Shown here: one piece after another, positions 23,474-53,900 of the stretch
Layout: each line of letters starts with the position of its first letter
Position numbering within the stretch: the first letter of the stretch is position 1
Origin: Penicillus capitatus
Taxonomy: Eukaryota > Plantae > Chlorophyta
DNA: 64,000 nucleotides
Reading direction: 5' to 3'
NCBI GenBank assembly: GCA_965649825.1
Contig: OZ287717.1
Span: 137,201 to 201,200 of the forward strand
Made by a program: the position numbers and the translations under genes
Notes under the pieces: generated by a model
Database searches by the model: none
The model's input: the letters and a program-made list of their open reading frames with translations, nothing else
What the model was told of the DNA's origin: nothing

Positions 23474-23807
23474 GCACAACGTCATGTGCAGCAATGTCTT
23501 GTTCTCTATCGCCCTCACGTTTTGTCAACTTCGACGGTGGATAATGCAATTGGGATGGCACGGGTCATGTCATGTCGTTGTTGCCGTGTGTGGCGTCGCG
23601 GTGTTTAAACGGCAGCGTGTGGCGCCAATCTTTCTTCGATGATCGCGCGTCCAACAACGAATTCCCAACACATACAAAACATCTACTAAACCTACGACAT
23701 TGCCTTGGGCGTACTCATCCACAGAACAGAATCATTTAAGCTCTGGCTCATGCTCTGATCCGCTCGTTCTATGTCTCATCGCTCGTCATCGAATTCCTGA
23801 GAGAAAA

Positions 23808-24919
23808 ATGAATGGCCCCGATGACCCGCACGACGTGAGTCAAGCATGTCGACCGTTTTGTGGGGTGACGCTTCCGTGAGACGCAGTTGCTCGTGGAGAT
23901 GTTGCTACAAAACGCCGTGCCTGCTGCCGTGGCGGATGAGATACCGCCCGACGTCCCAGTAGGATTCTCGTTTTGCACAGAGACAGGAACCGAACGGCCG
24001 TGTGCCACGTAGGAATTCTTGATGGATGACTTCTTTCCGCCGCAAGTTCTAGATGACATCATTGCCAATTGGGTACGTGCATATCTATCTCATCGCATCG
24101 CTTTCTAGACAACTGTCCTGTCTATGCAGCAACCGGGAATCCCACCCCGCAATCTAGACAAGGTCCAAATGAGTGAGAAAGAGTGAATGAGTGGGTGTTA
24201 AGTACTGGCTGCTGTGTAGGACTTGTTTCTGAGTTATAAGGATCCTGAGATTGAGCAGCAGTATGTGAGATGGGAAGCGGATCGCAGTCGGGGGCATTTT
24301 GCATTCTGCTCCTTGCTCATCTTCTGCTGCTTTCTGGCACACTTGACACAATGTTCGCAGAGCCTCGATGAAAGATGGTTGAGATGTGGGAATCAGACCG
24401 TATTCATTCTGGGGACTGTACTGATTTGGATTCCATGCATAGCTCTCATGTTGCCCAAAGCGTACAACTGGCGCCTAAAGTGAGAAGACATCCACCGTTC
24501 ACTGGACTGCTGCTAAATTGCGCTGTGTCTGGCGGCGGCGGTGGCGGCGCTGTTACAGAGAAGGAATCTGTGCTCTCCATCAGTGTCTGTTTGGAATCAT
24601 GATGGCATCTTTTGTTCAGTACCATTTTCAAGCTTTGGACACAAATTCATCCTGTGCCATGTGGAAGCCAGATTTTGTTTTGCTCTATACCGTGCCTGTT
24701 CTCTTGGAGAGTATACTTTTTAAAGTTCGATTAAAGTATCATTTTCCACTTAATCTCCTCTTGATCTCTTTGGTTCTTTTCCCTTGGTTGGAGACAGGGG
24801 TCACAGATCTATCCATGAGTGATTACTTGGTCAATATGGCCGCCGCGGTGGTTATACCTGCTTGTTTTATTTCGTTATACCAAACACGAAGGCAGAAGAT
24901 CTTTGAACAGGGGTTATGA
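23808..24919 (+). CDS. Uncharacterised multi-pass membrane protein
   Basis: Five GT-AG introns join an acidic N-terminus to FLSYKDPEIEQQY..5-6 hydrophobic segments..YQTRRQKIF; TGA at 24919. Confidence 0.6.
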
Positions 24920-25801
24920 AGAAGGGTCTCACCTCACCGAGTAGTAGCGTAGGTCGGGTGTGTGGGATTGGGTGGTGTGGGGGATCTGTTCATTATGATG
25001 ATAGGGGGAAGCAAGGGGGCATATGTGCTGTCGTTGTTGTTTGTTATCTCTGTTCCTCTATCTGTATGTGTAGTGATGGATGAGCATTTTTTTCCTTTCA
25101 ATGGCAACACACACTTTCTGTTCGCCACCGATGTCTGCCAGGGAAGAAGAGAATTTTGCAATGCTCTGCTATGCTGGAATGAGTCGTTGCCGAAAATTCC
25201 TTTTCACCTGTTTTCGTTAGCCAATGAGTAGGGAAACGTTGCGTGTCGATGTTGTTGTTGTTGTTGTCTCTAATGTGTCAATGAATCTGATGATGGATGC
25301 ATGATGCGGGGGATTGGAGTGGGCTCTATGCATGGTGACTCGCATTCTCTCTCACATATTGTTTTATCTTGTCTAGCATGCACGACTCAGTATCGTCATC
25401 GTTTTCTATGGGCAGGGCGAACGTACACACATACACATTCAAGATACGTGGATCGATCGCAACAACAAGTGCTCCACGTTGTTTTTCAGATGTCTGTCTG
25501 TCTTTCTTTGCTGAGTGACGCTGTCGACGGACGACCGACGTATGGGACAACGACGTCCGTGTCTTTTCATGACTGCATTCTCCCTTCACGTCCTCTCTCT
25601 CCCGCCCCCGCCACACATCTCTTTCTTTTCCAACATCGTGTGTGCGGCGAGGGAGCAATAAATCGAGATATCACGTGATGATGATGATAATGATGACGAT
25701 AAGCGTATCGAAGACGACGTCCAAACAATAGATGATGATTCTATACGTTGCCCGCCCATTGACGATCATGGTGTGCATATGTGTTGTCTTACGACTGAGG
25801 G

Positions 25802-26454
25802 ATGCTTGATTTGATGATGAAGATGATCATGTCGCGAAAAAGTTCTTTCGATGATGCAAAGGTCCGAGGGAAGCACGCGACGTCCGGTTCCACGACGACA
25901 GCGATTACGCCTCGCCACAAGAGCGAGACACAGCAGCAGGAGCCCGTCCGCCGCCGACGTCTTTCTGGATCGACTTCGGTGTCGGAACCGAAATCGACAC
26001 GAGACATCTCGACGATCGCTGCCGCTAAAGAGACGTCTCAACCGTCGAACGTATCGCGCGGATCGGCGACTGTTGCGGACGTCACGCAACTGACGGAGAT
26101 ACTGGAGCGGATTGTGCCTTTGCTGAAAACGGGCGCCTATGACACGACCGTGCTCTCACCGACGGCCAAGACCCTCATCGAAACCCTGACGAAACAACAC
26201 CTAGACGAAGACGTAAGCCAGCGCGCTCCCCTGACGTCACATCAAAGCAAGCGCGTGCGTTGCAGGTCGTGGTGCCGCTGTGCTGGATTGTGGCCGCGAT
26301 TCAGGACAGTCGAGAGAAGCGTCCACCACATGCGATGCACCGTCCGCCTTTCCCTGTTGTCTTTTTCCTGATTCAGTTGTTCATGGTCTTGTTCAATTTT
26401 GTCATGCTCGTTGCCATCATTTCGTCATTCTTTCCAACTTCATCCATGCTTTGA
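25802..26454 (+). CDS. Uncharacterised probable tail-anchored protein
   Basis: Ser/Thr-rich ORF, intron ~26212-26265, C-terminal hydrophobic stretch VVFFLIQLFMVLFNFVMLVAIISSFF. Start uncertain. Confidence 0.55.
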
Positions 26455-26483
26455 CCATCGGTCAGGGATTTTGACATAGCGTA

Positions 26484-27429
26484 CTAACGTGCTGTCCATC
26501 CGCCGTCTATAGAAAGGCAGGCACCCGTGATGCTGGATGCATGAGGGCCACACAGATACAACGCCTAGAAGAATAGCCATAGCTGTTGACGAGACGACAT
26601 AGACGTGTAAGAGCATTGCTAGAGCAGCGATGTCATCGATCTCCACAAACTTCTTCGTTGGCTGATCGCGCAGGAGCACGTTCGAAATGACATCCTCTTT
26701 GGGCATCTGTCGCACACGTGCCGTATCTTCCAACTGATTCCGGACGAGATCTGTGAACGTGTACCTATGCCAGCCACGCAGGTACGGTTATCAGGTGCGC
26801 CGTTTTCGTTGGGCGGTCGACCCGGGGCAGATCGCGTTGCATGTGATGCCGGTTTCGGCCGTTTCTAAGGCGACGGTTTTGGTCAGGCCAGCGACGCCAT
26901 GCTTGGCTGCATTGTAGGCGGATTTGTAAGGCGAGGCCACGAGTGCATGCATCGATCCGGTATTGATAATGCGTCCCCATTTCGCGTCCTTCATCTTGGG
27001 CAGGGCGGCTTTGATGGTATGGAAGCTGGCCGTGAGAACGATGGCCAAAATGGCATCCCATTTCGCATCGGGCATCTCCTCCACCGCCGCCACATGTTGA
27101 ATACCGGCATTGTTCACCTGGTCACACATCTCCTGGTCTCAAGCACTAAGTGTCGAGGTCGCTACCAGAATATCGAGTCTTCCAAACCTGTGGTGGATGT
27201 CGCCGATGAGTCGGCGGATCTCATCGGGTCGGGCCAGATCGGCACGCGAGCGCATGACGTCGATTCGGTTTTCGGCCATCAGTTGTTGCGACAGCTGCAC
27301 GACGTCGGGATCTTCGCCTTCGATGCCATGTATCGTGACGTTGGCGCCTTCCTTGGCAAACGCTTTGACGATTCCGAGTCCAATGCCCCGCGTACTGCCT
27401 GTCACCAAAGCGACACGCCCTTTCAACAT
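26484..27429 (-). CDS. bdhA: 3-hydroxybutyrate dehydrogenase (SDR, bdhA type)
   Basis: ALVTGSTRGIG, VNNAGIQHVA, WGRIINTGSMHALVASPYKSAYNAAKHG (YxxxK), NAICPGYV, SIDGGWTAR; 3 introns. Confidence 0.9.
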
Positions 27430-28001
27430 TTTACATCATGACGTCAACAAATGCAAAGACATATGGATTGCTCTTGCGCATCCTCCCCCCTGAATCTTCC
27501 CTCTCCCTTCACGCCAGGTACAGGAACGGTCTGACGATGTCTTTCCAGATATCTCTGTCGTTGCCAAACGGCCATCGTTGGCGGCAGGTGCGATCGCATT
27601 TAAATCCATTCAATCGTTGTCTGCTTGTCGAAGGCATTTATCGTTCTCCAAAGACTTTACATAGGGTTGCGTTCATTTCATATACAGGCTTCCTTCTGCA
27701 ACGTCGTATATGACTGTGCAAAATGTCATAACGATAGGCGAACAATGACATAATCTGCACGGAATAAGATCAAATGAAATCTAAGTTGGCCTTTTCTCTT
27801 CGAGAAGGCTATCCATCAAATTGCTTGTCTTTTGCATCGGGTGTTCCGGTGCAGATATCAAATGCAACAAGTTTTTTGACTGTGCCAGCTCGTTGAATCT
27901 CAAACGATGGGTTTAAGATAAGCAAGCGAGAGTATTGCGTTCTGCTATTAGAAAAGAATAACCGACCTCCATTTCTGCACTCTCTACGAAACATTGATGA
28001 C

Positions 28002-31000
28002 TCAAAACGCGCTTCCTTGTCCGTCATAGTCCGTGTGACAGAAACATTTTGCTGAACTTGGGTAGCCTGGATCATCTGGCGCCTCGAGTTCCTACACACA
28101 GTTGACATCCACTACAGAAACGACTAGAAAAACTGGTAGCTCTCACCGTGTGGAGCATCTTTTCAGTTAGTTCATCTATCGCATTCTGGAGGACGGAGAT
28201 TTCGGTTCTGAACGTCTCCTTCTCGGATGCTTCAAAAGAGCTAATTTCGCTCTCTAGTTGCTTGCGCATGATCTGTTCTTTTTTGTACTCGGAATCCAGG
28301 TAGTCGATTCTCTTTGCCTGGCCTTCGATCACGACGGCGTGACTGCTCTCGCGACGTTGAATGTCAGCTCTCAGGTCCAGGAGTTCTTGCACTTCGAGTT
28401 GATCCTCGTGTACCTGTTCCATTTCGGCCAAGTCTGCGTTGTACATCGCGGTGATGTTGGCCACACGCTCGACCAGATCGTTCAGCTCCGCCTCCTGACG
28501 TTGCTCCAGAGTATGGACGTTCTCTTTGACGTCGGCGAGCTCGTGTTTGAGTTGCTGGACCTCTTCGGACCGCGTTTCCTCTAGATGTGACAAATTGCTG
28601 GTGAGTTGCTGGTAACTGGCGACGGTGTCGGCCAACTGACGCTCCAGTTCGGCGCATCGCTGTTCGCTGGCAGCAATGGCCTCTTGTTTTGCCTTGAGTT
28701 CCTCCTCCAGGCTCTGGGCTTTGGCCGAGTCCACTGCCTCCGTCAGTTTGTTGATCTCTGTCATCTTGGCGATCTCTTCTTCCACGAGGGCGCCTCTCAG
28801 ATCCGAGAGCGAACGGCTGAGGGCTGTCATATCTCGACGCATCTGTAGCAGGTTGCTCTGCAGCGTGTTCTTCTCGGAGTCCACCGCGCGACGCTTCTGT
28901 CGGGTTTCGTCGAGTTCGTTCAGAATGGAATCGAGCTCGGCTTCGGACGCTTGCTGTATCTGTTGGAGTTTCGAGATGTGCGTCTGGTGCTCCTGCAGTC
29001 TTTGATGCATCTGTCGAATGTGGTGCTCGTATTTCTCGCCGAAATTGGCGTCCGGCAAACCATAACAAATCGAAAAACGCTGCGTCTCCGACATCTTCCC
29101 AGTCTAGCACACCACAGGCAACACAAACGTCACATCATTGCTGTATGTAAAGGAGGTGAGTGAGTACCTTGGCGAATCGCTTCATCATCAGATCGCTGAT
29201 GTGCGTCTGGAGGGACATGCAGATCTCTTCGCCCTGGTTCGTCTCGAACTGAAACACGTGCAGAACTCCGGCGACCTTCATCTTGATGAAGATGGCGTTG
29301 TTGCTGGATCCAAACTGCATGATGTCGCGCAGCTCTGCCGAGTGAAGGTACTCCTTGGGGACCGGTCGGAAGAAATGCACGCCGCGTTTGTTGATGCCCA
29401 GGATCACTTTGGATGGCAACAGACCGATCGGATCGGCGTTCCGTCGCACGGGAAAGAACGTCGAGTTTCCTAAAGGGCAGACAGGCATCAGATGGCGGCG
29501 TCGCGATGCAGAGAAACGGCACGCACCGTAGGGAAGACTGTGGATGATTCTCAGGAACTGCAGTTTTCCTCCCTCCTTCGTCAGCTTGCTGAAGGCGTTG
29601 TATCTGTGGTAGACGTCCTGGTGCCATTGCTGACGCTTGCGCGACATCAGAATCTACACGGCCATGTCATTCATCTCTCTGGTCCACGTGGACTGGGAGG
29701 CACCTGAGAGGTCGTGAATTTCTCGGCGGCTTTCATGAAACGCGGATCCGTCTTCTTCAAATCGGCGCCCTCGGCGACGATGATCTGCAGGGCGCACATC
29801 TGCGCCGCGTCGTCCCGGACCACTGGATAGTTTCCTTTCAGAAAGTCATGCTGCGCTTGCATATAGGACAGCGACAGAAAAATCGGCTCCGTGATGTGTT
29901 CGTCTTGTTCCCTGCCGGACGGACACACATTCCCGAGGCCTTCGATCGAGAGAGGGGCCGTTTCACCTGAACATGCGTTTCTTGAATAGAAAGTAAGTTC
30001 CTTCCTTGTCCTCCTTCTGCGAAAGGATGTCGGCGATGTACAGATTCTCCTCGAGATGTTTGTGCGTGTCCACGAGCTCTCCGTTCTCCACCGCCTCGGA
30101 TGGCTTTATCTCGTAGAGCGAAACGTCGCGTAGTTGGCGAGGCTGATCGTCTCGGCGATGCTCTCGATCGCCTCCTGGACCGTCGATGTCGTGTGGTAAT
30201 CGAAGCGGCACTCGCGTCCGTCCAGAAACTGAACTCTCGTCGTCAACTTCTTGTTCAACAGCAGAGCCTCGATCTCGTCCAGACCCAGCGCCTAAGGAAG
30301 ATTCATGTCGCACGAGCGCGAGCGGGTCGGCGGCATCACCTCCTGTCTCGGTCCGGCGCGTGTTGTTCGCTTGAATGTTGCCCAGACGCGAGACACGAGC
30401 TCCTTCATGCGGGCCGAGTCGTGGGACTCCTGCATCACCTGGTGGATGTACTCGGAGATGACGGCGATGTACTCCTACGGACACGCGACAGGAGTGCAGA
30501 CCCTGAGCGGGCCTTCGGGTCTGTTCACCTTGGCCGGATCGAAGACGGACGCCGCCACGATCCAGAGTTCCCAGATGCGATCTCTGTACTCCTCGAGTGG
30601 GACACTTCGGCTCTGTTTGATCAGCTGCATGTAGAGTTCGTTCTTCAGATCCGGATGCTTGGCACACGTCTTGATGAGACGCGATGCCGTTTCGACCAGC
30701 TGTCCGGCTTCGAGCGACGCCGGACGGAAGCCCATATAGGTACAGATGTACTCATGCATCTCCAAAGCGTCTTGCGTCTGGCCAGAGTCCAACTTCAGCA
30801 AACTGGACGGCAGTGGCTTCTGCAGACACATGAAGGGTCTGGCGGCGGGTGGATGCGTATGGTGACGGACTTCGGAGAATTTGAGCAGCTCATCGAGCAG
30901 GGCACCTTCGGCGTCTGCAAAGGGTGGGTCTTCGGCGACGTCCAAAACGGAGGAACGACGGGATTCGCTCTTCTCAGTAGCGCCATTCACTTTGACATGT

Positions 31001-31260
31001 TCATCAATCTAAGCAGCGATGCCGTTGGAGAGCCTCTGACGAACGACTGCACGCAAAGGCAGGCGTACTTGAAACTTGAATTCGACGCTGTCAAGCCCAG
31101 CTAGTTTTTTGTTTGACGCGTACGTCGAAACGGATACCGCGTCCTACACACAAGCCATAGGATGAAGGTTCAGGTTGCTGACAGTCGACAAACAAATGGC
31201 TGGCACGGCATCGTCTTCGTGCATATCGAATAGCGTCGTTTGGGCAAGTCCCCGCAACAT
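28002..31260 (-). pseudogene. Motor-less KCBP derivative (MyTH4-FERM-coiled coil, unique C-terminus) with a 1-nt frameshift at ~30121
   Basis: Own ATG (31260) and 5' exons homologous to KCBP-B. Body near-identical to KCBP-A. Diverges at EQIMRK just before the motor into QLESEISSFE... TTTT (47098-47101) is TTT here, giving TAA at 30106-30108. Last exon and 3' end uncertain. Confidence 0.7.
28260..31091 (-). repeat. Inverted repeat arm A (~2.83 kb), copy of 46130-48958
   Basis: Identity runs from ACAGCGTCGAATTCAAG to CAGATCATGCGCAAGC, introns included; 13 mismatches in the first ~610 bp by hand. Confidence 0.98.
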
Positions 31261-34128
31261 GTCCGATAAATACCCACTGAAAATTACACAGCAATATACA
31301 TAGTACGAGATGAGTGCGATACCGATAAAGGCCCAACTCGCAGGTCTTTCTTATATATAGCGTGCAAACTGAGAATAGTCTCTTACTCCCGCTTAACACT
31401 TAGTACACTGTGGTAACATGAGAATGGTTCATAATTCACCATAGACTTTGTGGAGATACGGCGCAGTTCGCAGATGCAGTGCAAGAAGCGAGAAACAGAA
31501 CGTCGACTTCCTTACGTTTTCGTTCATTTCTTCAGGCTTCGTTATGGGGTACAAAGATTACGAGCGTTAAGTTTTTGAAGAATAAACCGGCTTAAATAAA
31601 AGAAGCCTAACACTTTCATCTTTTTCCAGGGATCTGAAGTTGAGTTCTGCGGAAGGTGGAAGGAAGAACGTCAACTGAAATCAGTACGACAGCTGCAATC
31701 ACACGTAAGACTTCATTTATTCGCATTTTTTGCCGTTTACTAATCATAGAAATTGTTTCCTGACCCGAAAATGCAGACAGATACTTCTACGACTTCATCC
31801 GGCAAGGAAGACGAGAACCATTTTAAGGGGATGCACTGCGAACAGGTCTGACAAACGAGCAATTCTTTGCTAAATGCACATTGGCAGGCCATCTTCGAAC
31901 GGACATCTTTAGGGGTTACAAGAGAACAGACTTAGCGACAACAGGTGCCTCCGCATTAACGGTGGCAAAGTTCTCGATGTTAACAGCTGTTATGTATAAA
32001 GTCAGATTCGACTGTTTGATAACTCAGAATACAATAGGAGCTTGTATGAATAGAAAACATCAATAGGAGAGGGAGCACACAACTGTGCGAATATATATTC
32101 CACATTCGGCGCTTTTTATGTTTTTTGTCTCCTGTTTTGCGGCAACTAGATCGTTTTGCTGTTTTGCTACTTTGTTGGAGAAATGCTGCTACTTGAATGT
32201 AGCAGGATGAGTTCAAGATGAAAATACCGGCCCATCGGCAAGACAACGAAAGCGATGAGCAACAATAGATGTAAGATCAGTTCGAACACAAGTATTGACG
32301 ATAGAGTCAAACTCCAAGAACAGACGGAGAATAAATGTTGCCGAAGCGATGATTAGTGACCAGGATGAATCTTGCAATTAGCACTCTTGCCAGAAAGATT
32401 TAATAGCTTAAGTCGGATCTTTCACATCCGTTAAGGACAAGATATCGATCAATATTTAGGTATGATGGAACTAATAGGAAGACAAGCAGCGAGTGCTAAG
32501 AGAAAAGATGCTATGCTCTGTTCGAGATGCAAGGAGATTTGACGTGCTTACTGTCGTAGGGGACAGCTGTTAGCTCCGCTGTCGTACTCCTTGGACAGCT
32601 GTTTCCTTCCGGGTCACATCAACACCTGAATACTTAAACGCGTTCCCTGTAAAAACTCTGCCTCGTTTGTAATCCATCATTGTTTGTCGCCTTACCTCGG
32701 CGCTTACAGCGGACAATGACACTTTTCAAATCAAAGCTCCAAGAAAGTATGCACGATGAAGAAGATAATTCGATCCACACGTATGCTAAGGTGTACATAT
32801 AACAATATTTTATCCTTTTCTAACTTAACGGCTATTTGCATCAAAGCCGCAGACAAAAGGAACAAGAACGGGATGAGTTGCAGGCTGTCACGCTTGTGTG
32901 TGTCACATCGTCTACTTCGTTTCTGAGGGGGTCGGCATCTCAAAGGGCGCTCGTGCAAGGTTCCCGTCTTTTCAGGGGTCTTTTTCTATGGTCTCGAGGA
33001 ACGGATGACTCACCTGTTGTGTGCAGTCATGTCACACTGATCGTATAAATATGTGGCATTGAACCTCGACCAACCTTGCTATGTGAACTGTAAAGTCTTC
33101 CGCTATGTTTTTTCGTTGAGCTCGGCGCTCCCGCGTGACCCTTACCACGGCGCAAGGGTTATGAAAGAATCGCACTATGATGGTCAAAGGTTGCAAGGAT
33201 TGAATATACACACCTAGGAAAATGAAGTTCGCTTGAGTGTTCTGTTTTCATATATCACAGCGTTAAGAACTTCATTTGTTTGTTTGTGGCGTTCCCATCA
33301 CATCGTGAGAACTTCATAAGCATCTTCATGCAAGTTCATCTGGAAATGCGACACGATTTTACAACACCATGCACAGAAAAAATGTAGCGGCGATGATGTC
33401 AATATCACACCGTCCGAAAACCCTCAGTCTTAGGGATTGATTGAAATGGCCAATTATATCGATTGCCAAACTATCGATGATCCACTATCACATCTCGAGA
33501 GGTGCCAAATCGTTTCAAAGTATCCTCGACACAAGCATTCAAAACCTGGCAACATCTAGAATCATACCATGCTACCTCTCCCTATCCATCGCATGCCTTC
33601 TGTACTGAGAGTGCCGAAGCAAGACGTTCTCTCTCATGCACGTCTATCTAAGAGGTCCGTGTCGATCGATCCGTTCTCGAACTCCTTTATATCTTGGATG
33701 CCAAACATTGCTTAACACAGACAAGACATCTAAGTCGACAACTTCTTAGAACACTCCTACGAAATTGGCAATCTCATCGCTTGTTTCATATCGGAATGCT
33801 CCTACCCATCTGAAATGAAACCATTGGCGAATGAGATGTTCTTTCTTTTACAAGCATCAGCTGTCAAGATGTTTGCCTCTTAACGACGTTTTGACGATCA
33901 AATACTGACCCATTCCGACTGTACGTAAGAAGTATTGTTGGCGACTTGTTGAGAAAACGCAGAATAGAGAAAACAAACTGTTTTAGAACAGGCGTTCTAT
34001 ATAGCGGAGAATGTCCATTAATGAAACGACGGTTCCGAGGTTCTGTCCGCCGCCAATCCAGATGGTCTGTCGGATTCGATGTATTTCTTCACCAGCGTCA
34101 GCGGACTTTTCTTGTTGTATCTGCCTCC

Positions 34129-35261
34129 ATGTGCACCGCTATCTTCTCTTACGGCGTCCACTCTTCTTTGCTCTTCTTCCTCGCCTTTAATCGCGACGAG
34201 TACTTTAACAGGTGCCAAAACTTCCCGCGTGCCTTAATGGCGACTGTCTTGCTCAGAACGGTTAACGTAGGGCGTCTGCGAAAGCGCATGAATGGAAAGA
34301 CCATCCAGGAGTTATCGCTCCGAGGGACCTCAAAAGAAAAGGCACATGGCTCGGAATTTCCAAGAGCGGCAGAGTCGCCTTTCTGACGAACCTATTCAAG
34401 GCGAAGAGTAAACGCCGCGCGCCGCCGCTTCGAACTCTCTCCCGTCTCCTGACCCTGCGTTCACAAAAGAGACCGCCACGTTCGCGAGGGACTCTGCCGG
34501 TCGATTTCTTAACCGGGTCGCAAAAACCGTCTGAGTTCTTGAGTGTATGAATACCCTTCTCTCTGAGATTCCAAACGTCATGTCTCTCCTTAGGACGTGG
34601 AACTGGAAAACTATCCGTCCCTGAATCTTGTGTGCGGGCAACTGTTTGAAGAGCCCGAGATATCAACAACGAGTTCTCAGGGATGCCAAGGGTCATCCTC
34701 TCTCGAAGCAGGCATCTATGGTACGCTCTCATTCACTGTCCCCATACCTCACAAGACAGTGTTCAGGACTGAGCAACGGTCCCATGGGCCAACCGAACTG
34801 GCACAAAGTGGAACACGGCAAGTCGGAACTGAAAAGTATCCTGGAAAGCGTCGGAAGAGGTAAGGCACACATCCCACTGTTCGGCACGTCGGTCAATGAC
34901 GTGTCCGGTATAGAGAAGGAGCTTCCATGGGATGAGATTTTTGATCGAGTCATGGGCAGAACAGAAGCAGTCCCTTTAGGGGGACCTTTGCCGGGGACAG
35001 GTATTGGCGGCTGGATGGAACGCCGTCTCAGTGCTATGCGTGTTCTTCCATTCTGGAATTTCGATCGAAACGTACAGCTCTGTCTCTCAAGCGTTTCCCC
35101 ATCGGAACGTGCGTTTCTCTGTCTTGAAGGGAGGTCTATGTGGTACGGTCTCACAGACACTGGTCGCCGTGTGGAAAGATCGTTCGGTGGAGATCAGAGA
35201 ACGTATCTGGGACGCAGATGAACATTTCCAGCAGCATCGCTACGCGTTCTGCTGCGACTGA
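34129..35261 (+). CDS. TANGO2: TANGO2/NRDE-family Ntn-hydrolase-like protein, copy 1
   Basis: MCTAIF..LAFNRDEYFNR, RDLKRKGTWLGISKSGRVAFLTN, SRGTLPVDFL, LSNG..WHKV, GTVSQTLV; 5-6 introns; frame intact. Confidence 0.9.
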
Positions 35262-35642
35262 TTTGCCTTCGGGCTTTTATAAAGGCTTTTATGATCCATC
35301 CCTCATTATCATCCATCCTTTTCTATTGCCTTGAGATGTCGACACACAAACGACGAACCTTTATTTCGTCAGGAGTTCGACCTCTCTGGCGACGCTCCAC
35401 GATTTAATACTCAAACTGCAAGTTGCAATAGATCAAACAAACAGGTCTACCGATAAGAGCACACTTTTTGGCTAGTGGGTTTCTCCTTCTAGACCAGAAG
35501 TCCTCTGAGGGACGCTGTTTGACTCGTATAAGGTAGACGAAAACGTGCGAAGCACAGTTATCCACAGTTTAGTGATTCTAGTCGTGCACTCCCCATCTAG
35601 ACGTGCACTTATCTTTTATTTCCAACGGGATTCTCAGTGAGC

Positions 35643-35726
35643 AGGAAGGGCATGGTTGCTCGATCATGGGACAAAAGAGTGACTAAGAAAGGCACGGTTG
35701 CTCAATCATGGGACAAAAGAGTGACC
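35643..35726. repeat. 42-bp tandem duplication upstream of TANGO2 copy 2
   Basis: 35643-35684 and 35685-35726 differ at 5 positions, all transitions; each unit contains AAGAGTGA. Confidence 0.9.
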
Positions 35727-35830
35727 AGCATATGTATGCGTTAGTATCTACTATTAAGAAGCGATAAAGGTTTTTTAATAAGCTGCGATTTCAAGTCGAA
35801 CGCGACGGACTCGATGATGTCATTTACGTC

Positions 35831-36992
35831 ATGTGTACCGCCATTTTCGCCCTTGGCACGCATACGTCGCTGCTCTTCCTCTTGGCCTTCAACCGGGACG
35901 AATTCTTTGACAGGTGACGCACCCGCTGCGACGGACAGGCGACGCTACGAGGGTCTGTGTCAGGAACGCGGCCGGCGTGCACAGATGGACGGACAGACCT
36001 GGCATCGTGGCACCGAGAGATCTCGAACGTCAAGGAACGTGGCTGGGTCTCTCCGAAAGGGGCAGAGTCTCCTTCCTCACGAACATACGCGTGGTAGATC
36101 GCCATCGATCCCTGTCCCTTTCACCGACGGCGACGAAACCTGTGTGGTGCGCAGCCCCAACCGAAGAGATCTCCTCTCTCCAGAGGCATGCTCCCAGTGG
36201 AGTTTCTCGAAGGACAGCAGACACCGTTAGAGTTCCTGACGGTAAGGCTGTGGCTTTCTGCCGACGGAGAGGTGCATCTATTGGCTGTGTCAATGGCAGG
36301 GGCTCGATGTTCACGACTACTCACCTCTCAACCTGATGTGTGCTGATCTTTCGGATCCGATGCAGCTCGGCATGTTCAGCTCGAAAGAAGAGGGAAAACC
36401 CTTCATCTTCGAGAAAGGCATCCACGGTCTCTTCGTCGACTGTGGGACCTGGCGCGGATCCGACGGTTGCGATGATGTCAGGTATCAGCAACGGCCGGCG
36501 AAATGACGCACGATGGTATAAGGTGGAACAAGGCAAGACACGACTGAAAGAGATCCTTGATCGCTTAGAGAAAGGTCCAGCCACATCTCTCCCTTTGCCG
36601 CCGCCATGTCGAAGGGCGGCGTGTCGTAGATGATGCGATTCCGTGGGATGACGTCTTTGAGCGCGTTCTGGGCAACAGCGATGAGGTGGACGTCGGGATG
36701 CCGTTGCCAGAGACGGGCGTCGAGGAATGGAGAGAGCGCAAGTTCAGTGCCATGCGCATCCTTCCTTTCTGGAACTTCGCTCCACCCGTACCCCTCTGCA
36801 TCACCCTCTCCCTGCGGCCCTTCGTCGACGGGCTCTGTGAAGGGCGGATTGTATGGGACCGTTTCGCAGACGGTGGTGGCTGTATGGAGTCATGGCTTGG
36901 TGGAAGTCAAGGAACGTCTGTGGGATGCCGATCAGAGATGCAGCCACGGAGAAATCGCCTTTCACTTGTCGAAACCCGTCACTGTCGTGTAA
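35831..36992 (+). CDS. TANGO2: TANGO2/NRDE-family protein, copy 2
   Basis: MCTAIF..LAFNRDEFFDR, GTWLGLSERGRVSFLTN, SRGMLPVEFL, ISNG..WYKV, YGTVSQTVV; 6 introns at the same positions as copy 1. Confidence 0.9.
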
Positions 36993-42629: not shown

Positions 42630-43129
42630 TTAATGTCGATGGGTTGCAGAAGGACCATCCTCCGTCGCATCTTTCAACGTCCTCAGCAGATTCGACACCT
42701 CGCGTCCCATCGCCAACGCACGATCCGATACATTCTCTGAACCCCCTGCCAACAGACCGCTCTCTAACTGCACCTACATATGACGGCCGCCGCCATCTGC
42801 GCCATCGCTGCGGGGGAAGACACACGCTGAGGAGCTTCTGTGTTAGATCTGGCGACAGCTGCAGGAGACGTCGCATCACATCCGCGCGCAGACGTGTGAC
42901 GCGCTGCAACGTTGATAGGAGGGATCGCTGTCGCGATGGGTCATCGTCGAGATGCGTCGTGAGGAAAGACGTCACTTCGTCCAGTCCATGCGTCGTCTCC
43001 GGCGACCATCCCGCCTGCGCGACAAACCGCCGACGTCGGACGCGTTGCATTCCAGCGTCTCCCGCCTACCAATTCGTACAGCAGCGCCTCCGCGTCTTCT
43101 TCCTGCGGCGGCGCGGCGCTCGCGTCCAT
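42630..43129 (-). CDS. Small helical protein of unknown function (2 introns); may instead be the 3' exons of the gene at 43174-44210
   Basis: MDASAAPPQEEDAEALLYEL/AGWSPE..LLSTLQRVTRLRADVMRRLL..KLLS/VQLESG..REVSNLLRTLKD* using two in-frame GT-AG introns. Confidence 0.45.
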
Positions 43130-43173
43130 CTCGTGCAAAATGCTTGATGTGACAGGCAGGTCCAGTCGATCAG

Positions 43174-44210: not shown

Positions 44211-44224
44211 GATTGCATAAGTCG

Positions 44225-44535: not shown

Positions 44536-44540
44536 GACCA

Positions 44541-45731: not shown

Positions 45732-46007
45732 GTCAACGTCTGGATATGCGCTGCATTTTGGCAGAAGTTAACCTCCGTGGTATTATTGTCATCCACCTCT
45801 TGATATCTTTCTTCGCAACGCTATTGTTCCTTCGATACGCTGTCGACTACCGTTCGCGTGTTTCTGCCGCATTCCCGTGACTCTCTCCGAACGCAAGTGC
45901 TTGACGCGGAGACGCAGAAGGAACGGTTATCTGCCGCAGCAGTCGCAACAACAGCGATTTTATCGCACGACTTCGCTAACACGACTTCTTTCCACGACAA
46001 ACGTCCC

Positions 46008-49000
46008 ATGGATTATACACCCGTAAGTTCCGCCCACCGCCCAGGCGACTTCAGCGGCAAACCCGACGGTGACGTGTTAGGGTGAAGATGTACCGGCTGT
46101 GGGTGTCCGGGACTCTTTGCCAGCGCTGAACAGCGTCGAATTCAAGTTTCAAGTACGCCTGCCTTTGCGTGCAGTCGTTCGTCAGAGGCCCTCCAACGGC
46201 ATCGCTGCTTAGATTGATGAACATGTCAAAGTGAATGGCGCTACTGAGAAGAGCGAATCCCGTCGTTCCTCCGTTTTGGACGTCGCCGAAGACCCACCCT
46301 TTGCAGACGCCGAAGGCGCCCTGCTCGATGAGCTGCTCAAATTCTCCGAAGTCCGTCACCATACGCATCCACCCGCCGCCAGACCCTTCATGTGTCTGCA
46401 GAAGCCACTGCCGTCCAGTTTGCTGAAGTTGGACTCCAACCGGACGCAGGACGCTTTGAAGATGCACGAGTACATCTGTACCTATATGGGCTTCCGTCCA
46501 GCGTCGCTCGAAGCCGGACAGCTGGTCGAAACGGCATCGCGTCTCATCAAGACGTGTGCCAAGCATCCGGATCTGAAGAACGAACTCTACATGCAGCTGA
46601 TCAAACAGAGCCGAAGTGTCCCACTCGAGGAGTACAGAGATCGCGTCTGGGAACTCTGGATCGTGGCGGCGTCCGTCTTCGATCCGGCCAAGGTGAACAG
46701 ACCCCAAGGCCCGCTCAGGGTCTGCACTCCTGTCGCGTCTCCGTAGGAGTACATCGCCGTCATCTCCGAGTACATCCACCAGGTGATGCAGGAGTCCCAC
46801 GACTCGGCCCGCATGAAGGAGCTCGTGTCTCGCGTCTGGGCAACATTCAAGCGAACAACACGCGCCGGACCGAGACAGGAGGTGACGTCGCCGGCCCGCT
46901 CGCGCTCGTGCGACATGAATCTTCCTTAGGCGCTGGGTCTGGACGAGATCGAGGCACTGCTGTTGAACAAGAAGTTGACGACGAGAGTTCAGTTTCTGGA
47001 CGGACGCGAGTGCCGCTTCGATTACCACACGACATCGACGGTCCAGGAGGCGATCGAGAGCATCGCCGAGACGATCAGCCTCGCCAACTACGCGACGTTT
47101 TCGCTCTACGAGATAAAGCCATCCGAGGCGGTGGAGAACGGAGAGCTCGTGGACACGCACAAACATCTCGAGGAGAATCTGTACATCGCCGACATCCTTT
47201 CGCAGAAGGAGGACAAGGAAGGAACTTACTTTCTATTCAAGAAACGCATGTTCAGGTGAAACGGCCCCTATCTCGATCGAAGGCCTCGGGAATGTGTGTC
47301 CGTCCGGCAGGGAACAAGACGAACACATCACGGAGCCGATTTTTCTGTCGCTGTCCTATATGCAAGCGCAGCATGACTTTCTGAAAGGAAACTATCCAGT
47401 GGTCCGGGACGACGCGGCGCAGATGTGCGCCCTGCAGATCATCGTCGCCGAGGGCGCCGATTTGAAGAAGACGGATCCGCGTTTCATGAAAGCCGCCGAG
47501 AAATTCACGACCTCTCAGGTGCCACCCGGTCCTCGGGGACCAGAGAGATGAATGACATGGCCGTGCAGATTCTGATGTCGCGCAAGCGTCAGCAATGGCA
47601 CCAGGACGTCTACCACAGATACAACGCCTTCAGCAAGCTGACGAAGGAGGGAGGAAAACTGCAGTTCCTGAGAATCATCCACAGTCTGCCCTACGGTGCG
47701 TGCCGTTCCTCTGCATCGCGGCGCCGCCATCTGATGCCTGCCTGCCCTTTAGGAAACTCGACGTTCTTTCCCGTGCGACGGAACGCCGATCCGATCGGTC
47801 TGTTGCCATCCAAAGTGATCCTGGGCATCAACAAACGCGGCGTGCATTTCTTCCGACCGGTCCCCAAGGAGTACCTTCACTCGGCAGAGCTGCGCGACAT
47901 CATGCAGTTTGGATCCAGCAACAACGCCATCTTCATCAAGATGAAGGTCGCCGGCGTTCTGCACGTGTTCCAGTTCGAGACGAACCAGGGCGAAGAGATC
48001 TGCATGTCCCTCCAGACGCACATCAGCGATCTGATGATGAAGCGATTCGCCAAGGTACTCACCTCCTTTACATACAGCAATGATGTGACGTTTGTGTTGC
48101 CTGTGGTGTGCTAGACTCGGAAGATGTCCGAGACGCAGCGTCGTTCGGGCAGGGATGGTTTGCCGGACGCCAATTTCGGCGAGAAATACGAGCACCACAT
48201 TCGACAGATGCATCAAAGACTACAGGAGCACCAGACGCACATCTCGAAACTCCAACAGATACAGCAAGCGTCCGAAGCCGAGCTCGATTCCATTCTGAAC
48301 GAACTCGACGAAACCCGACAGAAGCGTCGCGCGGTGGATTCCGAGAAGAACACGCTGCAGAGCAACCTGCTACAGATGCGTCGAGATATGACAGCCCTCA
48401 GCCGTTCGCTCTCCGATCTGAGAGGCGCCCTCGTGGAAGAAGAGATCGCCAAGATGACAGAGATCAACAAACTGACGGAGGCAGTGGACTCGGCCAAAGC
48501 CCAGAGCCTGGAGGAGGAACTCAAGGCAAAACAAGAGGCCATTGCTGCCAGCGAACAGCGATGCGCCGAACTGGAGCGTCAGTTGGCCGACACCGTCGCC
48601 AGTTACCAGCAACTCACCAGCGATTTGTCACATCTAGAGGAAACGCGGTCCGAAGAGGTCCAGCAACTCAAACACGAGCTCGCCGACGTCAAAGAGAACG
48701 TCCATACTCTGGAGCAACGTCAGGAGGCGGAGCTGAACGATCTGGTCGAGCGTGTGGCCAACATCACCGCGATGTACAACGCAGACTTGGCCGAAATGGA
48801 ACAGGTACACGAGGATCAACTCGAAGTGCAAGAACTCCTGGACCTGAGAGCTGACATTCAACGTCGCGAGAGCAGTCACGCCGTCGTGATCGAAGGCCAG
48901 GCAAAGAGAATCGACTACCTGGATTCCGAGTACAAAAAAGAACAGATCATGCGCAAGCGCTACTTTAACCAGATTGAAGATATGAAGGGGAAGATTCGCG

Positions 49001-50930: not shown

Positions 50931-53900
50931 ATGGCCGAAGAGGTAACCGTGTTGCCCCCGTCGCCCGCTGCCGCTCGAGCCATTCACCTGCTGGCTGTCA
51001 ACAACCGAACCCTTACCCGCCCTATGGCCGCTGTGTAGGACGCGGTATCCGTTTCGACGTATGCGTCGAACAAGAATCTCACTGGGCTCGGCAGCGTCGC
51101 CGGCAATTTCCAGGTAATATCCGCCGTCGCAGCTCCGACGCCGGCCAGCCCGATGGACCGTTGACGGGTGCGATGTGTAGGTGGATGGCTTGCCACGACC
51201 GACGAGCAAGTGCCCCGAAATCGTGAACAAGAACGTTCAGGAGTCGGAAGATCCGCCTTTCAATGAACAGGACGACATGAGCCTCGAAGACCTCCTCGTC
51301 TTTTCACCTGTCACCCATCAGCACCTATCGACGATCTCTCCTGAGCCGTGTCTGCCACGCAGGAAATGATAACGACGAGTATCCTCCGAATGGATGGGGA
51401 GAACAATGAGAAAGCCGTTTTGATGTTTAACGACGTTTTGAAGTATATGTCGGAATCTGACGACCCTGCAGAGAAGGTGCCGCAGAAAGACGTCGCTGGC
51501 AGGATCATAGAGGACTGCCTCCGCGCCGCCATCCTCAAAGACGAGCTCTATATGCAGCTCATGAAGCAGACGCGCAACAATCCCAATCTCACATCGAAGA
51601 TGCGCCTCTGGGAGCTCTGGCTCGTTCTCGCTGCATCCGCGCCGCCATCCAAGGTGCGCCGCCAGCTGTCACATCGAGGGGCTGCCACGATCTGTGCTGT
51701 CTGCAGGACTATGTGTCCCTCCTGTCCGAATTCATTCACAGCGTCATGCGTGACGAGTCCGAGGACGAAACGGTGCACGGTCTCGTGGAACGTGTGTGGA
51801 ACACGTTCAAGCGCTCGACGAAGGCGGGACAGAGGAAAGCCGCGCTGCAGTCTGCCGATATCGAGGCGCTGTGGGAGAACAAGAAACTGGTCACGCGTGT
51901 CTCGTTCTTGGACGGCAACGCGGCGACGCTGGACTATGAAGTCATGACGACTGTCCAGGAAGCTGTGGAGTTGCTGGCCAAGACCATCGAACTGGAAAAC
52001 TTCAACAGTTTCACCATCTATAAACTTTACACACCGCGACAAGATGAGGACAGCCACGAGGCCGTCCAAGAGCAGCACGTGCTGCTCGATGAAAACAGAT
52101 ACATCGCGGACATTCTGGCAGAGGCCAAGGCCGAAGGAATTGATGTGACGTTGCTGTTCAAGAAAAAGATGTTTAGAGAACAGGACGAGCACATCACGGA
52201 GCCCGCATTCGTTAACCTATCCTACGCTCAGGCTCAGCACGACTTTCTCCAGGGGAATTATCCGGTAGTGAAGGATGACGCCTCCCAGATGTGCGCCTTG
52301 CAGATCTTCGCTGCGCAAGGACCGGGTCTCGACGAAAGAAGCGACGTCTTTCTGCGAGAGCTCGATAAAAATCTCACCAAACAGGTGGGTACCCCTACAG
52401 GCGGCGGCGCCGCCACTGAGCGCCGCCACTACTGGCGTCTGTTCTAGGTGAGAATGACACGTCCAGGGGAGGAATGGCGTCGGGATGTGTATCGCAGATA
52501 TGTCGCCTTGAGCAAACTGACACAGGAACATGCGAAGCTTCAGTTCTTGAGGATTCTCAGAAGTCTGCCCTACGGCAATTCGGTTTTCTTTTCGGTCAAA
52601 CGAACGGAGGACCCCATCGGTCTGCTGCCGTCCAAGCTGATATTGGGTATCAATAAGAGAGGTGTCCACTTCTTTCGACCGGTCCCCAAGGAGTACCTTC
52701 ACTCGGCCGAGCTGCGCGACATCATGCAGTTTGGATCTAGCAGCCACGCTATCTTCTTTAAGATGCGTGTCGCCGGCGTTCTACACATCTTTCAGTTCGA
52801 GACGCGACAGGGAGACGATATCTGTATGGCCTTGCAGACACATATTACCGATATTATGATGAAGCGCTATGCCAAGGCCAAGGAGCACAGGCGACCGGCC
52901 AATTCTACTGGACTGGCGCAGGCGAATTTCGGTCCGAAATACGACCAGCACTTGAAGAAGATGCAGAAGGATGTCGAAGAGGCGTCGATGCGAATTGAAG
53001 AACTGGAGAAGGAGGAGAAAGAGGCGACGTATAAAGTACAGGAGATGCGTACGCAGCTCGAAGGCATCCGAACCAATCTCACCAGCTACGAGTCGCAGAA
53101 GATGGATCTGCAGTCCGAAATCTCTGCCGCTCGCAAAGCCATCGGCGCCGCCAAAGAAGAGCTCCACGATATTCAAGCCGTCCGTTGCCTTTACGTCTGA
53201 CGATTCTCCCAACCGTCGCTGTCTGTTGACAGGAACTCGCCGCCATCGAGACGCTAAAGGCATCTGAGGTCACCGAAGTCGCCGTCCCGAATGCCGACAG
53301 TGTGCAAGTCCAGCAGCTACAGGTCAACTACGAACAACTACAGGCAGAACTGAAAGAAGCCCAAGAAAAGTGCGATCGCGTTCTCACTCTTTTTTGTCGC
53401 TATCTTATGGATGTCACTCTTTAGGGAAGACGCCGTTTCCAATCAGCTAGATGAGATCGAAGAGCAGAGGAGCAATGTTAGCAAGCGTTTGGGAGAGCTC
53501 GAGGCGTTGAAGGGAACGGAGGTCCAGGATCTCAAAGCAGAGTTAGAAGATATCAACAGCAACTTGAAGAATCGCATCAAAGCTAAGGACGGCGAAGTGA
53601 ACGAGCTCCAGGAGAAGCTCGCCAATATGACAGCTATGTATAACGAAGACCTGGCCGAGATGGCTCAGATGAAAGAGGACCAGACGGAACTGGTGGAGCT
53701 TAGACAGATGCGTCAGGACGTCGAGCGTATGGAGAAGGAAACGGCGTCCGTCATTGAGGGTCAAAGGAATAGAATCGATTACTTAGAGAAGCAGTACAAG
53801 GAAGAACAAGTTATGCGCAAGAGGCACGTCTCAGCCGCCGGCGGCGGCGGACGGTGTGATGGTGTCTGTGTAGGTACTTTAATCAGATGGAGGATATGAA

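What the first reader, a model, noticed from the sequence alone, without database searches (positions are those of the whole stretch)
28002..31260. Motor-less MyTH4-FERM KCBP derivative with its own older 5' and 3' ends
Seen: outside the repeat, the minus gene has a start exon, an intron and DAVSVSTYASNKKLAGL (exon from 31143). These match KCBP-B (51039: DAVSVSTYASNKNLTGL, with a similar upstream intron end CCTATGGC..TGTGTAG), not KCBP-A. Identity to KCBP-A stops at EQIMRK, within 1-2 nt of where KCBP-B has an intron, and is followed by a novel heptad-like tail (QLESEISSFEASEKETFRTEISVLQNAIDELTEK). Inference: this is an older motor-less paralogue whose middle was overwritten by gene conversion from KCBP-A, not a fresh partial duplication. 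It could act as a cargo or microtubule adaptor or a dominant-negative partner.
Basis: partly seen in the sequence, partly recalled or inferred. Interest (0 to 1): 0.7.

Follow-up and report, generated by a model that had tools for sequence, protein, structure and literature searches.

The report
Motor-less mosaic copy of KCBP kinesin
A green-algal genome carries a patchwork copy of a cargo-carrying kinesin gene that lacks the motor and still swaps sequence with its full-length neighbour, but the copy in this window has a one-base frameshift and nothing shows the gene is used.

Summary
The minus-strand gene at 28002-31260 (copy C) has three parts:
- a KCBP-B-type start (31213-31083 matches 50966-51099 at 77%; the exon part is 45/52 identical to B and random versus A);
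- a 2.83-kb KCBP-A-type body with introns (28260-31091 = 46130-48958, 98.3%), encoding MyTH4, FERM and the stalk;
- an orphan, coding-like tail with its own intron and stop.

A second contig of the same metagenome assembly (an alternative haplotype) has the same mosaic without the deletion and encodes an intact 888-aa protein.

Comparing two A and two C alleles shows no fixed A/C difference in the first 40% of the tract (P=2.6e-4), two shared polymorphisms, and 26 fixed differences in the rest. This indicates recent gene conversion between the two loci, not one fresh duplication.

A and B are only 56% identical, so simple overwriting of a B-like gene is unlikely. A microhomology-joined chimera that was later homogenised with A fits better.

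Whether the copy functions is unresolved. Low nonsynonymous diversity is confounded by the conversion. There are no transcripts and no orthologue.

The parts
31207..31260 (-). Putative first exon of copy C. It has in-frame ATGs at 31260 and 31224. ATGCACGAAGAC (31224-31213) resembles KCBP-B exon 1, ATGGCCGAAGAG. B's donor GTAACC reads GATGCC here; the next usable donor, GTGCCA, starts at 31206.
   Evidence: by-eye comparison with B 50931-50950
31144..31206 (-). Intron 1 of C (63 nt, GTGCCA...GTGTAG). Its 3' part is alignable with KCBP-B intron 1.
31092..31143 (-). KCBP-B-type part of exon 2 (DAVSVSTYASNKKLAGL). It is 45/52 identical to B 51039-51090 and at random level versus A.
28260..31091 (-). 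KCBP-A-type body: one arm of the inverted repeat, nine exons with their introns. It encodes MyTH4, the FERM lobes and the whole coiled-coil stalk up to ...EQIMRK. It is 98.3% identical to 46130-48958.
30121..30123 (-). T3 run where A1, A2 and the second C haplotype have T4. The frameshift leads to stop TAA at 30108-30106. It is either a null allele or a consensus error.
30754..30784 (-). Dense patch private to the window's C allele: 7 differences in 31 nt (N88G, R89Q, K95E plus 3 synonymous). It is absent from A1, A2 and C2.
29064..29076 (-). Cluster of 8 substitutions in 13 nt, fixed in both C alleles (RSGRD becomes FSICY). It lies in the linker after FERM. Relatives keep the A state.
28147..28259 (-). 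Orphan tail, first part (QLESEISS...EKMLHT, 38 codons including the C at 28260). It is in frame with the stalk, has a heptad pattern, and its codon score is typical of coding sequence.
28092..28146 (-). Predicted last intron of C (55 nt, GTGAGA...GTGTAG). It is intact in both haplotypes.
28002..28091 (-). Predicted last exon (ELEAPDDPGYPSSAKCFCHTDYDGQGSAF plus TGA). The two SNPs between haplotypes (28068, 28047) are both third-position synonymous changes in this frame.
   Evidence: codon positions worked out by hand
46130..48958 (+). The partner arm inside full-length KCBP-A (gene 46008-50222). It exchanges sequence with C.
50931..51099 (+). KCBP-B start codon, exon 1, intron 1 and the first part of exon 2. 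This is the closest relative of C's 5' end.
53824..53873 (+). KCBP-B intron 8 (GC-AG, phase 2 after AAG AG). The position is ancestral and also occupied in Bryopsis. The intron is lost in KCBP-A. A/C identity ends 1 nt before this position.

Best explanation
Copy C is a real, lineage-specific, three-part mosaic gene copy in an uncultured ulvophyte-like green alga.

Structure:
- A KCBP-B-type start: ATG, intron 1 and the first 17 codons of exon 2.
- This is joined in register, at an 8-nt stretch shared by A, B and C (CAGCGTCG), to a KCBP-A-type body that keeps A's introns and encodes MyTH4, FERM and the full stalk.
- The body ends 15 residues before the motor core and runs into an orphan, coding-like tail that has its own intron and stop.

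History:
- C lies inverted, 15 kb upstream of the KCBP-A/KCBP-B tandem pair.
- Its body is kept 98-99% identical to KCBP-A by intrachromosomal gene conversion. Conversion is recent in the 5' 40% of the tract and older in the 3' 60%.
- The copy is therefore older than the 1-2% divergence suggests.

Coding state: one haplotype encodes an intact 888-aa motor-less protein. The window's haplotype carries a 1-nt frameshift.

Inferred, not shown: if the intact allele is expressed, the protein would bind the same cargo, microtubule or actin partners as KCBP-A through MyTH4-FERM. It could also pair with itself or with KCBP-A through the almost identical stalk. It would then act as a non-motile tether or competitor, or as the non-motor partner in a single-headed dimer.
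For: Shown:
- Mosaic structure and junctions.
- The same junctions, tail and splice sites occur on a second contig of assembly ERZ25074695 (L002, 98.3% identical to window 23506-34047).
- The intact 888-aa ORF on L002 contains MyTH4 at 123-228 and the FERM lobes at 233-532, with no kinesin domain.
- A's N-terminus is ancestral: P0001 starts MEDYNVEDE..., L005 starts MEELNGKEG...LNFQIDEH.

Gene conversion (unless stated):
- There are 0 fixed A/C differences in 46130-47269 and 26 in 47270-48622. That is 16 events, P=2.6e-4.
- Two sites are polymorphic in both genes (46737, 46894).
- At 14 sites only one A allele matches C.

Coding competence:
- All 10 introns keep GT-AG in both alleles.
- Diversity between the two C alleles is 0.64% in exons against 3.05% in introns and 3.2% upstream.
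- All 7 exonic SNPs private to C2 are synonymous, and both SNPs in the tail exon are synonymous.
- For A1 versus C1, dN/dS is 0.28.
- The first tail exon has a codon score of 0.58, against a coding mean of 0.51, and no non-coding window reaches it.

Functional inference, from the literature: engineered motor-less Arabidopsis KCBP was purified with domain truncations, and the authors assign microtubule and actin interaction to the MyTH4-FERM tail. A construct without the motor did not rescue the kcbp-1 mutant, and rigor KCBP is dominant-negative (PMC4574192). [quoted passage not shown]
Against: - The window's allele is frameshifted.
- Low nonsynonymous diversity can be imported from KCBP-A by conversion, so it does not prove selection on C.
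- In the 3' half, where conversion looks old, the changes that can be polarised on the C lineage are 3 nonsynonymous events (9 substitutions, including the radical RSGRD to FSICY) against perhaps 2-4 synonymous ones. This is compatible with neutrality.
- B's original exon-1 donor is destroyed in C.
- The tail has no homologue among 1.8 billion representative proteins or in JGI metagenome contigs.
- No transcript and no orthologue were found.
- Shared polymorphisms could in principle come from reads of A and C being mixed during consensus building in a 15x metagenome assembly.
Confidence: 0.5

Rival explanations
1. C is a non-functional chimeric duplicate: a duplicated pseudogene, or a gene in limbo. 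It looks intact only because conversion from the constrained KCBP-A keeps repairing its body. The tail is fortuitous read-through into flanking DNA.
For: - There is a frameshift in one of two sampled alleles.
- A radical 8-nt substitution cluster and R540G are fixed on the C lineage.
- The original exon-1 donor is lost.
- The tail is an orphan.
- No orthologue or transcript was found.
- The synonymous/nonsynonymous pattern is explainable by variation already filtered in A and imported by conversion.
Against: - The first tail exon scores as typical coding sequence and above every non-coding window.
- Both SNPs in the tail exon and all 7 private C2 SNPs are synonymous.
- Only one indel falls in 2.67 kb of exons, against 4.25 per kb in the upstream intergenic DNA.
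- All splice sites are intact in both alleles, and the junctions are in frame at both ends.
- The frameshift sits in a homopolymer of a 15x assembly and may be an error.
Confidence: 0.4
2. C is a single fresh partial duplication of KCBP-A with no later exchange. On this view the 98% identity simply reflects youth.
For: The identity is high and extends through the introns, and the breakpoints are sharp.
Against: - The 5' end is B-type and in register, at 13-23% divergence, while A's 5' end is the ancestral A type.
- Fixed differences are absent from the first 40% of the tract (P=2.6e-4).
- Polymorphisms are shared between the paralogues.
- C is present with the same structure in two haplotypes that differ by 3% in flanking non-coding DNA.
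Confidence: 0.06
3. The mosaic is an assembly artefact: a chimeric join of KCBP-A, KCBP-B and unrelated reads.
For: The source is a 15x long-read metagenome assembly. The window also differs from the deposited contig by about 45 SNPs in 41.5-50.7 kb, which shows haplotype switching or different versions.
Against: Two separate contigs (462,601 bp and 12,629 bp) carry identical junctions, with 98.3% identical, collinear flanks. The B-type part is 13-23% diverged from B, so it cannot come from misplaced B reads.
Confidence: 0.04

Closest known systems
KCBP / kinesin-14 class VI (Arabidopsis ZWICHEL/KIN-14E; Bryopsis Kin14VIa/b; KCBP-A and KCBP-B of this window)
   Same: The N-terminal MyTH4 plus FERM tandem and the long coiled-coil stalk. 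The body is 98-99% identical to KCBP-A and has the same introns.
   Different: C has no kinesin motor, no neck-motor junction and no C-terminal regulatory or calmodulin-binding helix. Its start is B-type and its 67-residue tail is an orphan. It cannot be a motor.
Bryopsidales Kin14VIc (KCBP-like motor fused to a VHS-domain tail; PMC12961179)
   Same: It is a precedent, in the same algal class, for modular reshuffling of KCBP genes into new architectures.
   Different: It is the complementary product. Kin14VIc keeps the motor and replaces MyTH4-FERM. C keeps MyTH4-FERM and the stalk and loses the motor.
Engineered motor-less KCBP and rigor KCBP in Arabidopsis (PMC4574192)
   Same: Same domain content as the laboratory truncation. 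In that study motor-less KCBP was purified with domain truncations, and the authors assign microtubule and actin interaction to the MyTH4-FERM tail. Rigor KCBP acts as a dominant negative.
   Different: Those are artificial constructs. C is a natural locus with its own start and tail, and its expression is unknown.
Kar3 with its non-catalytic partners Cik1/Vik1 (yeast kinesin-14 heterodimers; from general knowledge)
   Same: A kinesin-14 pairing through a coiled coil with a partner that cannot hydrolyse ATP. This is the kind of single-headed dimer that C plus KCBP-A could form.
   Different: Vik1 keeps a motor-homology domain that binds microtubules, whereas C has nothing after the stalk. The two are not homologous, and heterodimerisation of C is untested.
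Concerted evolution of inverted paralogous repeats by intrachromosomal gene conversion (general phenomenon)
   Same: A tract of high identity that includes introns and has diverged flanks. Divergence is patchy and polymorphisms are shared.
   Different: Nothing unusual mechanistically. The point of interest is that one partner is a truncated chimera.

Membership tests
KCBP / kinesin-14 VI | C-terminal kinesin motor domain (PF00225) with the kinesin-14 neck | tested here: not met
   Pfam scan of the intact C2 protein finds no kinesin or Microtub_bd hit. KCBP-A has Kinesin at 837-1153 (E=1.5e-106). The ORF leaves KCBP-A homology after EQIMRK.
KCBP / kinesin-14 VI | N-terminal MyTH4 + FERM tandem | tested here: met
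   MyTH4 at 123-228 (E=2.9e-19), RA_2/FERM_N at 233-325, FERM_M at 330-445 (E=1.6e-16), FERM C-lobe at 447-532.
KCBP / kinesin-14 VI | Calmodulin-binding regulatory helix C-terminal to the motor | tested here: not met
   The region is absent because the protein ends in the orphan tail. No test for calmodulin binding was made on the tail.
Duplicated (unprocessed) pseudogene | Disabling mutation in the reading frame | tested here: inconclusive
   The frameshift and premature TAA are in the window's allele only. The allele on L002 is intact. The site is a homopolymer in a 15x assembly.
Duplicated (unprocessed) pseudogene | Neutral pattern of substitution (dN/dS near 1, indels as frequent as in non-coding DNA) | tested here: inconclusive
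   For A1 versus C1, omega is 0.28. The nonsynonymous-to-synonymous diversity ratio between C alleles is about 0.12-0.15. There is 1 indel in 2.67 kb of exons. All of this is confounded by conversion from A. The outgroup is too diverged to polarise synonymous sites.
Processed retrocopy | Loss of the parental introns | tested here: not met
   Eight KCBP-A introns lie inside the tract and are retained, at 96.6% identity.
Interlocus gene conversion / concerted evolution | High-identity tract including introns, bounded by unrelated or much more diverged flanks | tested here: met
   98.3% identity over 2,833 nt with sharp ends. The flanks are B-like (77%) on one side and orphan on the other.
Interlocus gene conversion / concerted evolution | Uneven divergence along the tract and polymorphisms shared between paralogues | tested here: met
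   No fixed difference in the first 1,140 nt and 26 afterwards (P=2.6e-4). Two sites are polymorphic in both genes, and at 14 sites one A allele equals C. Caveat: only two alleles per gene, both taken from assemblies.
Chimeric (mosaic) gene | Adjacent segments with different closest relatives, joined in frame | tested here: met
   The 5' segment is 45/52 identical to B and random versus A. The body is 98% identical to A, while A and B are only 56% identical over it. The tail has no relative. Both junctions keep the frame.
Non-motor partner of a kinesin-14 (Cik1/Vik1-like role) | Coiled-coil heterodimer with a catalytic kinesin-14 chain | not testable with these tools
   The only evidence is that the stalk is 98-99% identical to KCBP-A's.

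The most novel reading that the evidence does not exclude
C is an expressed, selectively maintained motor-less KCBP. It pairs through its near-identical stalk with KCBP-A, giving single-headed dimers, or it competes for MyTH4-FERM cargo and microtubule sites. Either way it tunes minus-end-directed organelle transport in an ulvophyte alga. Continuing gene conversion with KCBP-A keeps the two stalks compatible. That would be a natural regulator of a kinesin-14 by its own truncated paralogue.
Probability: 0.2. Interest if true: 0.6.

Novelty: new variant of a known kind. Interest (0 to 1): 0.4.

Why it matters
KCBP-type kinesin-14s drive retrograde chloroplast transport in Bryopsis and in the moss Physcomitrium (PMC12961179). 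A natural paralogue with the cargo- and microtubule-binding head and the stalk but no motor would be a built-in competitor or partner for that transport system. It would complement the known Bryopsidales case of a KCBP motor with a swapped tail.

Independently of function, the locus is a clean small example of a chimeric duplicate whose apparent youth comes from gene conversion with its parent. Dating duplicates by identity alone would get the age wrong here.

The practical caution is that the window's allele is frameshifted and there is no expression evidence. It may equally be an evolutionary dead end.

Tried and rejected
(1) Inversion-flip idea. I considered that recombination between the inverted arms had swapped the 5' ends, so that A's start and C's tail once formed one host gene. 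Rejected: A's N-terminus (MDYTPGEDVP...[12 protein letters not shown]) is conserved in A-type relatives P0001 and L005. Both haplotypes are also collinear.

(2) Tail as a relic of a B-like stalk exon. The best tblastn match is B residues 602-639, 32% identity, E=0.14 in a tiny search space with composition correction switched off. By eye the serine codons differ (TCN in B, AGY in C). Not significant.

(3) Tail homologues. An exhaustive HMMER search of 1.8 billion representatives returned only the window's own mechanical ORF (P0121) and one coiled-coil noise hit. A scan of JGI metagenome contigs, including the pattern KCFCHTDY, returned only a full-length A-type transcript. Note that a 38-residue coiled-coil segment could not reach significance against a library of that size unless the homologue were close.

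(4) Motor-less KCBP-like database hits as orthologues. P0061 is 100% identical to full-length P0034/P0035 up to residue 789, so it is an isoform. P0062, P0063, P0081 and P0086 look like fragments or partial models from other algal classes.

(5) Polarising synonymous differences with the closest nucleotide outgroup (L005). Only 44% of codons are identical at conserved residues, so this is uninformative.

(6) An alternative haplotype for KCBP-A from protein clusters. Only the deposited-contig version (P0123/L003) exists.

(7) Similarity of C's flanks to A's flanks or to B's intron 8 and motor exons. None was found.
Full report
Source and setting.
The window is nuclear DNA of a green alga with short (47-96 nt) introns. 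A mechanical ORF from the finding (P0121) is encoded on two contigs of the ENA metagenome assembly ERZ25074695. They are ctg340358_15x_l (462,601 bp), which contains the window, and ctg295774_15x_l (12,629 bp, L002). The closest named relatives of the kinesins are from Bryopsis and Ostreobium, at about 45% identity. Closer unnamed relatives exist as transcripts (P0001, P0002/L005, P0003).

Two full-length KCBP (kinesin-14 VI) genes lie in tandem on the plus strand. I built both gene models by hand.
- KCBP-A: 46008-50222, 13 exons, 1189 aa.
- KCBP-B: 50931-55099, 11 exons, 1190 aa.

They are old paralogues. Over the MyTH4-FERM-stalk region they share 46.5% of amino acids, 55.7% of nucleotides and 40% of third codon positions. 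In a neighbour-joining tree, A groups with P0002, P0001 and P0003, and B falls outside that group.

Checking the observation.
- The minus-strand copy C shares 28260-31091 with KCBP-A 46130-48958. Identity is 98.3%, with 43 mismatches, a 1-nt indel and a 4-nt indel, and the introns are included.
- Upstream of that tract, C 31213..31083 aligns to KCBP-B 50966..51099 at 77% (E=2e-22). This covers the 3' part of intron 1 and the first 17 codons of exon 2.
- The exon part is 45/52 identical to B but 26/55 to A, which is the level of shuffled sequence.
- By eye, C's ATGCACGAAGAC (31224-31213) also corresponds to B's exon 1, ATGGCCGAAGAG. B's donor GTAACC reads GATGCC in C. A GTGCCA donor six bases downstream keeps the frame.
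- Downstream, identity to A ends after ...EQIMRK (AAG C).
- B has a GC-AG intron one nucleotide further on (53824-53873). Bryopsis KCBP has a phase-2 intron at exactly that position, AAG AG|GTATAA...GCAG|A TAT. The intron position is therefore ancestral and KCBP-A has lost the intron.
- The tail then reads QLESEISS...EKMLHT, followed by a 55-nt GTGAGA...GTGTAG intron and ELEAPDD...GSAF-stop.

In the window, exon 6 of C has T3 (30123-30121) where KCBP-A has T4. The frame shifts and ends at TAA 30108-30106, inside the FERM domain. As assembled, the window's copy is not an intact gene.

A second haplotype.
L002 is collinear with window 23506-35909. It is 98.3% identical over the 10.5 kb that contains C. 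It carries the same B-type start, the same two junctions and the same tail, but it has T4. With A's splice sites it gives an uninterrupted 888-aa protein, and all ten introns keep GT-AG in both alleles. Pfam finds MyTH4 (123-228) and the FERM lobes (233-532) and no kinesin domain. The mosaic is therefore not an assembly join. The frameshift is either a segregating null allele or a homopolymer error in a 15x assembly. Seven of the 17 indels between the two contigs are 1-nt homopolymer changes.

Gene conversion.
The deposited contig (L003) differs from the window by about 45 SNPs between 41.5 and 50.7 kb. This gives a second KCBP-A allele, A2. I compared A1, A2, C1 and C2 across the tract.
- In 46130-47269 there is no fixed A/C difference.
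- Two intronic sites (46737, 46894) are polymorphic in both genes.
- At 14 sites one A allele matches C and the other does not.
- From 47270 to 48622 there are 26 fixed differences, forming 16 events. They include a 4-nt intron indel and a cluster of 8 substitutions in 13 nt.
- C1 and C2 are identical from 47566 to the junction.
- The chance that none of 16 events falls in the first 40% of the tract is 2.6e-4.

This is the pattern of recent exchange between the loci in the 5' part and older homogenisation in the 3' part. It is not the pattern of one clean recent duplication. The direction cannot be told. The window's C allele also carries a private dense patch (7 differences in 31 nt, 30754-30784) that matches neither A allele nor B.

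How the mosaic probably arose (inference).
KCBP-A's N-terminus (MDYTPGEDVP...[12 protein letters not shown]) is conserved in A-type relatives (MEDYNVEDE..., MEELNGKEG...LNFQIDEH). A therefore kept the ancestral start, and C's start is truly B-type.

The B-type piece is 13% diverged from B in the exon and more in the intron. That is far younger than the A/B split but roughly ten times older than the A/C body divergence.

Because A and B are only 56% identical, ordinary homologous conversion of a wholly B-like gene by A is unlikely. Both junctions sit on the short stretches where A and B happen to be identical and in register: CAGCGTCG at the 5' end and ATGCGCAAG at the 3' end. I therefore favour a chimera joined by microhomology. 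Its A-type body, once present, has been kept similar to A by homologous conversion.

Nothing after the 3' junction resembles B's intron 8 or the motor exons. The coincidence of that junction with the ancestral intron position is roughly a 2% chance by my estimate, and it remains unexplained.

I first considered that recombination between the inverted arms had swapped the 5' ends. The conserved A-type N-terminus refutes this.

Is it a working gene?
For:
- The frame and splice sites are intact in one haplotype.
- Both junctions are in frame.
- The first tail exon scores 0.58 on a codon log-odds scale trained on A and B. The coding mean is 0.51 and no non-coding window reaches 0.58. The score partly reflects coiled-coil amino-acid composition.
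- Between the C alleles, exons differ by 0.64%, introns by 3.05% and the upstream spacer by 3.2%, with 4.25 indels per kb in the spacer.
- All seven exonic SNPs private to C2 are synonymous, and so are both SNPs in the last exon.
- For A1 versus C1, dS is 0.027, dN is 0.0075 and omega is 0.28.

Against:
- Conversion imports variation that selection has already filtered in KCBP-A, so these ratios do not prove selection on C.
- In the 3' part, where conversion looks old, the changes assignable to the C lineage are R540G, D708N and the radical RSGRD-to-FSICY cluster. These stand against perhaps 2-4 synonymous changes, which is compatible with neutrality.
- One of the two sampled alleles is frameshifted.
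- The tail has no homologue.
- All close relatives found are full-length motors.
- Motor-less database hits are isoforms (P0061 is identical to P0034/P0035 up to residue 789) or fragments.

I cannot separate 'young functional gene' from 'duplicate kept presentable by conversion' with the data to hand. I put them at about 0.5 and 0.4.

Likely action if expressed (inference).
The protein would be the KCBP-A tail and stalk without the motor, neck junction or regulatory helix. In Arabidopsis, the construct without the motor did not rescue the kcbp-1 mutant. Motor-less KCBP was purified with domain truncations, and the authors assign microtubule and actin interaction to the MyTH4-FERM tail. A rigor mutant is dominant-negative (PMC4574192). 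[quoted passage not shown]

A natural motor-less form would therefore be expected to do one of three things: occupy the same cargo or filament sites, form non-motile homodimers, or pair with KCBP-A through the 98-99% identical stalk into single-headed dimers. The last would resemble in principle Kar3 with Cik1/Vik1. None of this was tested.

Comparison with what is known, and verdict.
C is not a kinesin, because the defining motor is absent. It is a KCBP-derived chimeric paralogue. Truncated duplicates, chimeric genes and concerted evolution of inverted repeats are all well known. Bryopsidales already show reshuffling of KCBP domains (Kin14VIc). I found no description of a separate motor-less KCBP gene, so I rate this as a new variant of a known kind.

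Interest is moderate (0.4). The structure and the conversion signal are solid. Function is open, and the copy in this window is broken as assembled.

Noticed in passing
window 48955-48960 versus 53824-53873; L004 6770-7091: KCBP-A has lost the ancestral phase-2 intron at the MRK|R neck position. KCBP-B and Bryopsis KCBP both keep it. A also lacks B's two stalk introns, while B lacks several of A's introns, so the two paralogues have lost different introns.
   Followed up: partly
window 53824-53873: KCBP-B intron 8 appears to use a non-canonical GC donor (GCACGT...GTGTAG). No GT-AG alternative keeps the frame.
   Followed up: partly
window 41580-50664 versus L003; window 18072-39094 versus L001: The window is not identical to the deposited ENA contig. 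There are only 6 mismatches in 21 kb on the C side but about 45 SNPs in 9 kb across KCBP-A, including Y702C and Q703R in the deposited version. There is also an indel-shifted stretch before about 41.56 kb. This suggests a haplotype switch or a different polishing version.
   Followed up: partly
window 31225-34047 versus 23506-28001 (against L002): Divergence between haplotypes is 3.2% with 4.25 indels per kb upstream of C, but only 0.65% downstream. The two C alleles are identical from about 29656 to 28069. Coalescence depth therefore changes sharply within the gene.
   Followed up: no
window 46351-46401: A 51-nt in-frame, stop-free intron in KCBP-A, also present in C at 30870-30820. It reads through as [17 protein letters not shown] and is easily mistaken for coding sequence. 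Relatives lack these residues.
   Followed up: yes
window 26650-27500 (-), 17900-20300 (-), 39280-40800 (+), about 57500-58100 (+): Neighbouring genes, identified from ORFs and precomputed Pfam hits. A short-chain dehydrogenase lies immediately downstream of C's stop. There is also a USP7-type ubiquitin hydrolase, a KH-domain protein, and a protein kinase downstream of KCBP-B.
   Followed up: no
window 44541-45731 (-): A 396-aa uninterrupted ORF with no Pfam hit on record lies directly upstream of KCBP-A on the opposite strand. It was not examined further.
   Followed up: no
P0061 versus P0034/P0035 (another chlorophyte, transcriptome): A complete 796-aa motor-less ORF is 100% identical to a full-length KCBP up to residue 789. 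It then ends after seven further residues (GESRARG). This looks like an intron-retention isoform, so truncated KCBP products may arise by splicing elsewhere.
   Followed up: partly
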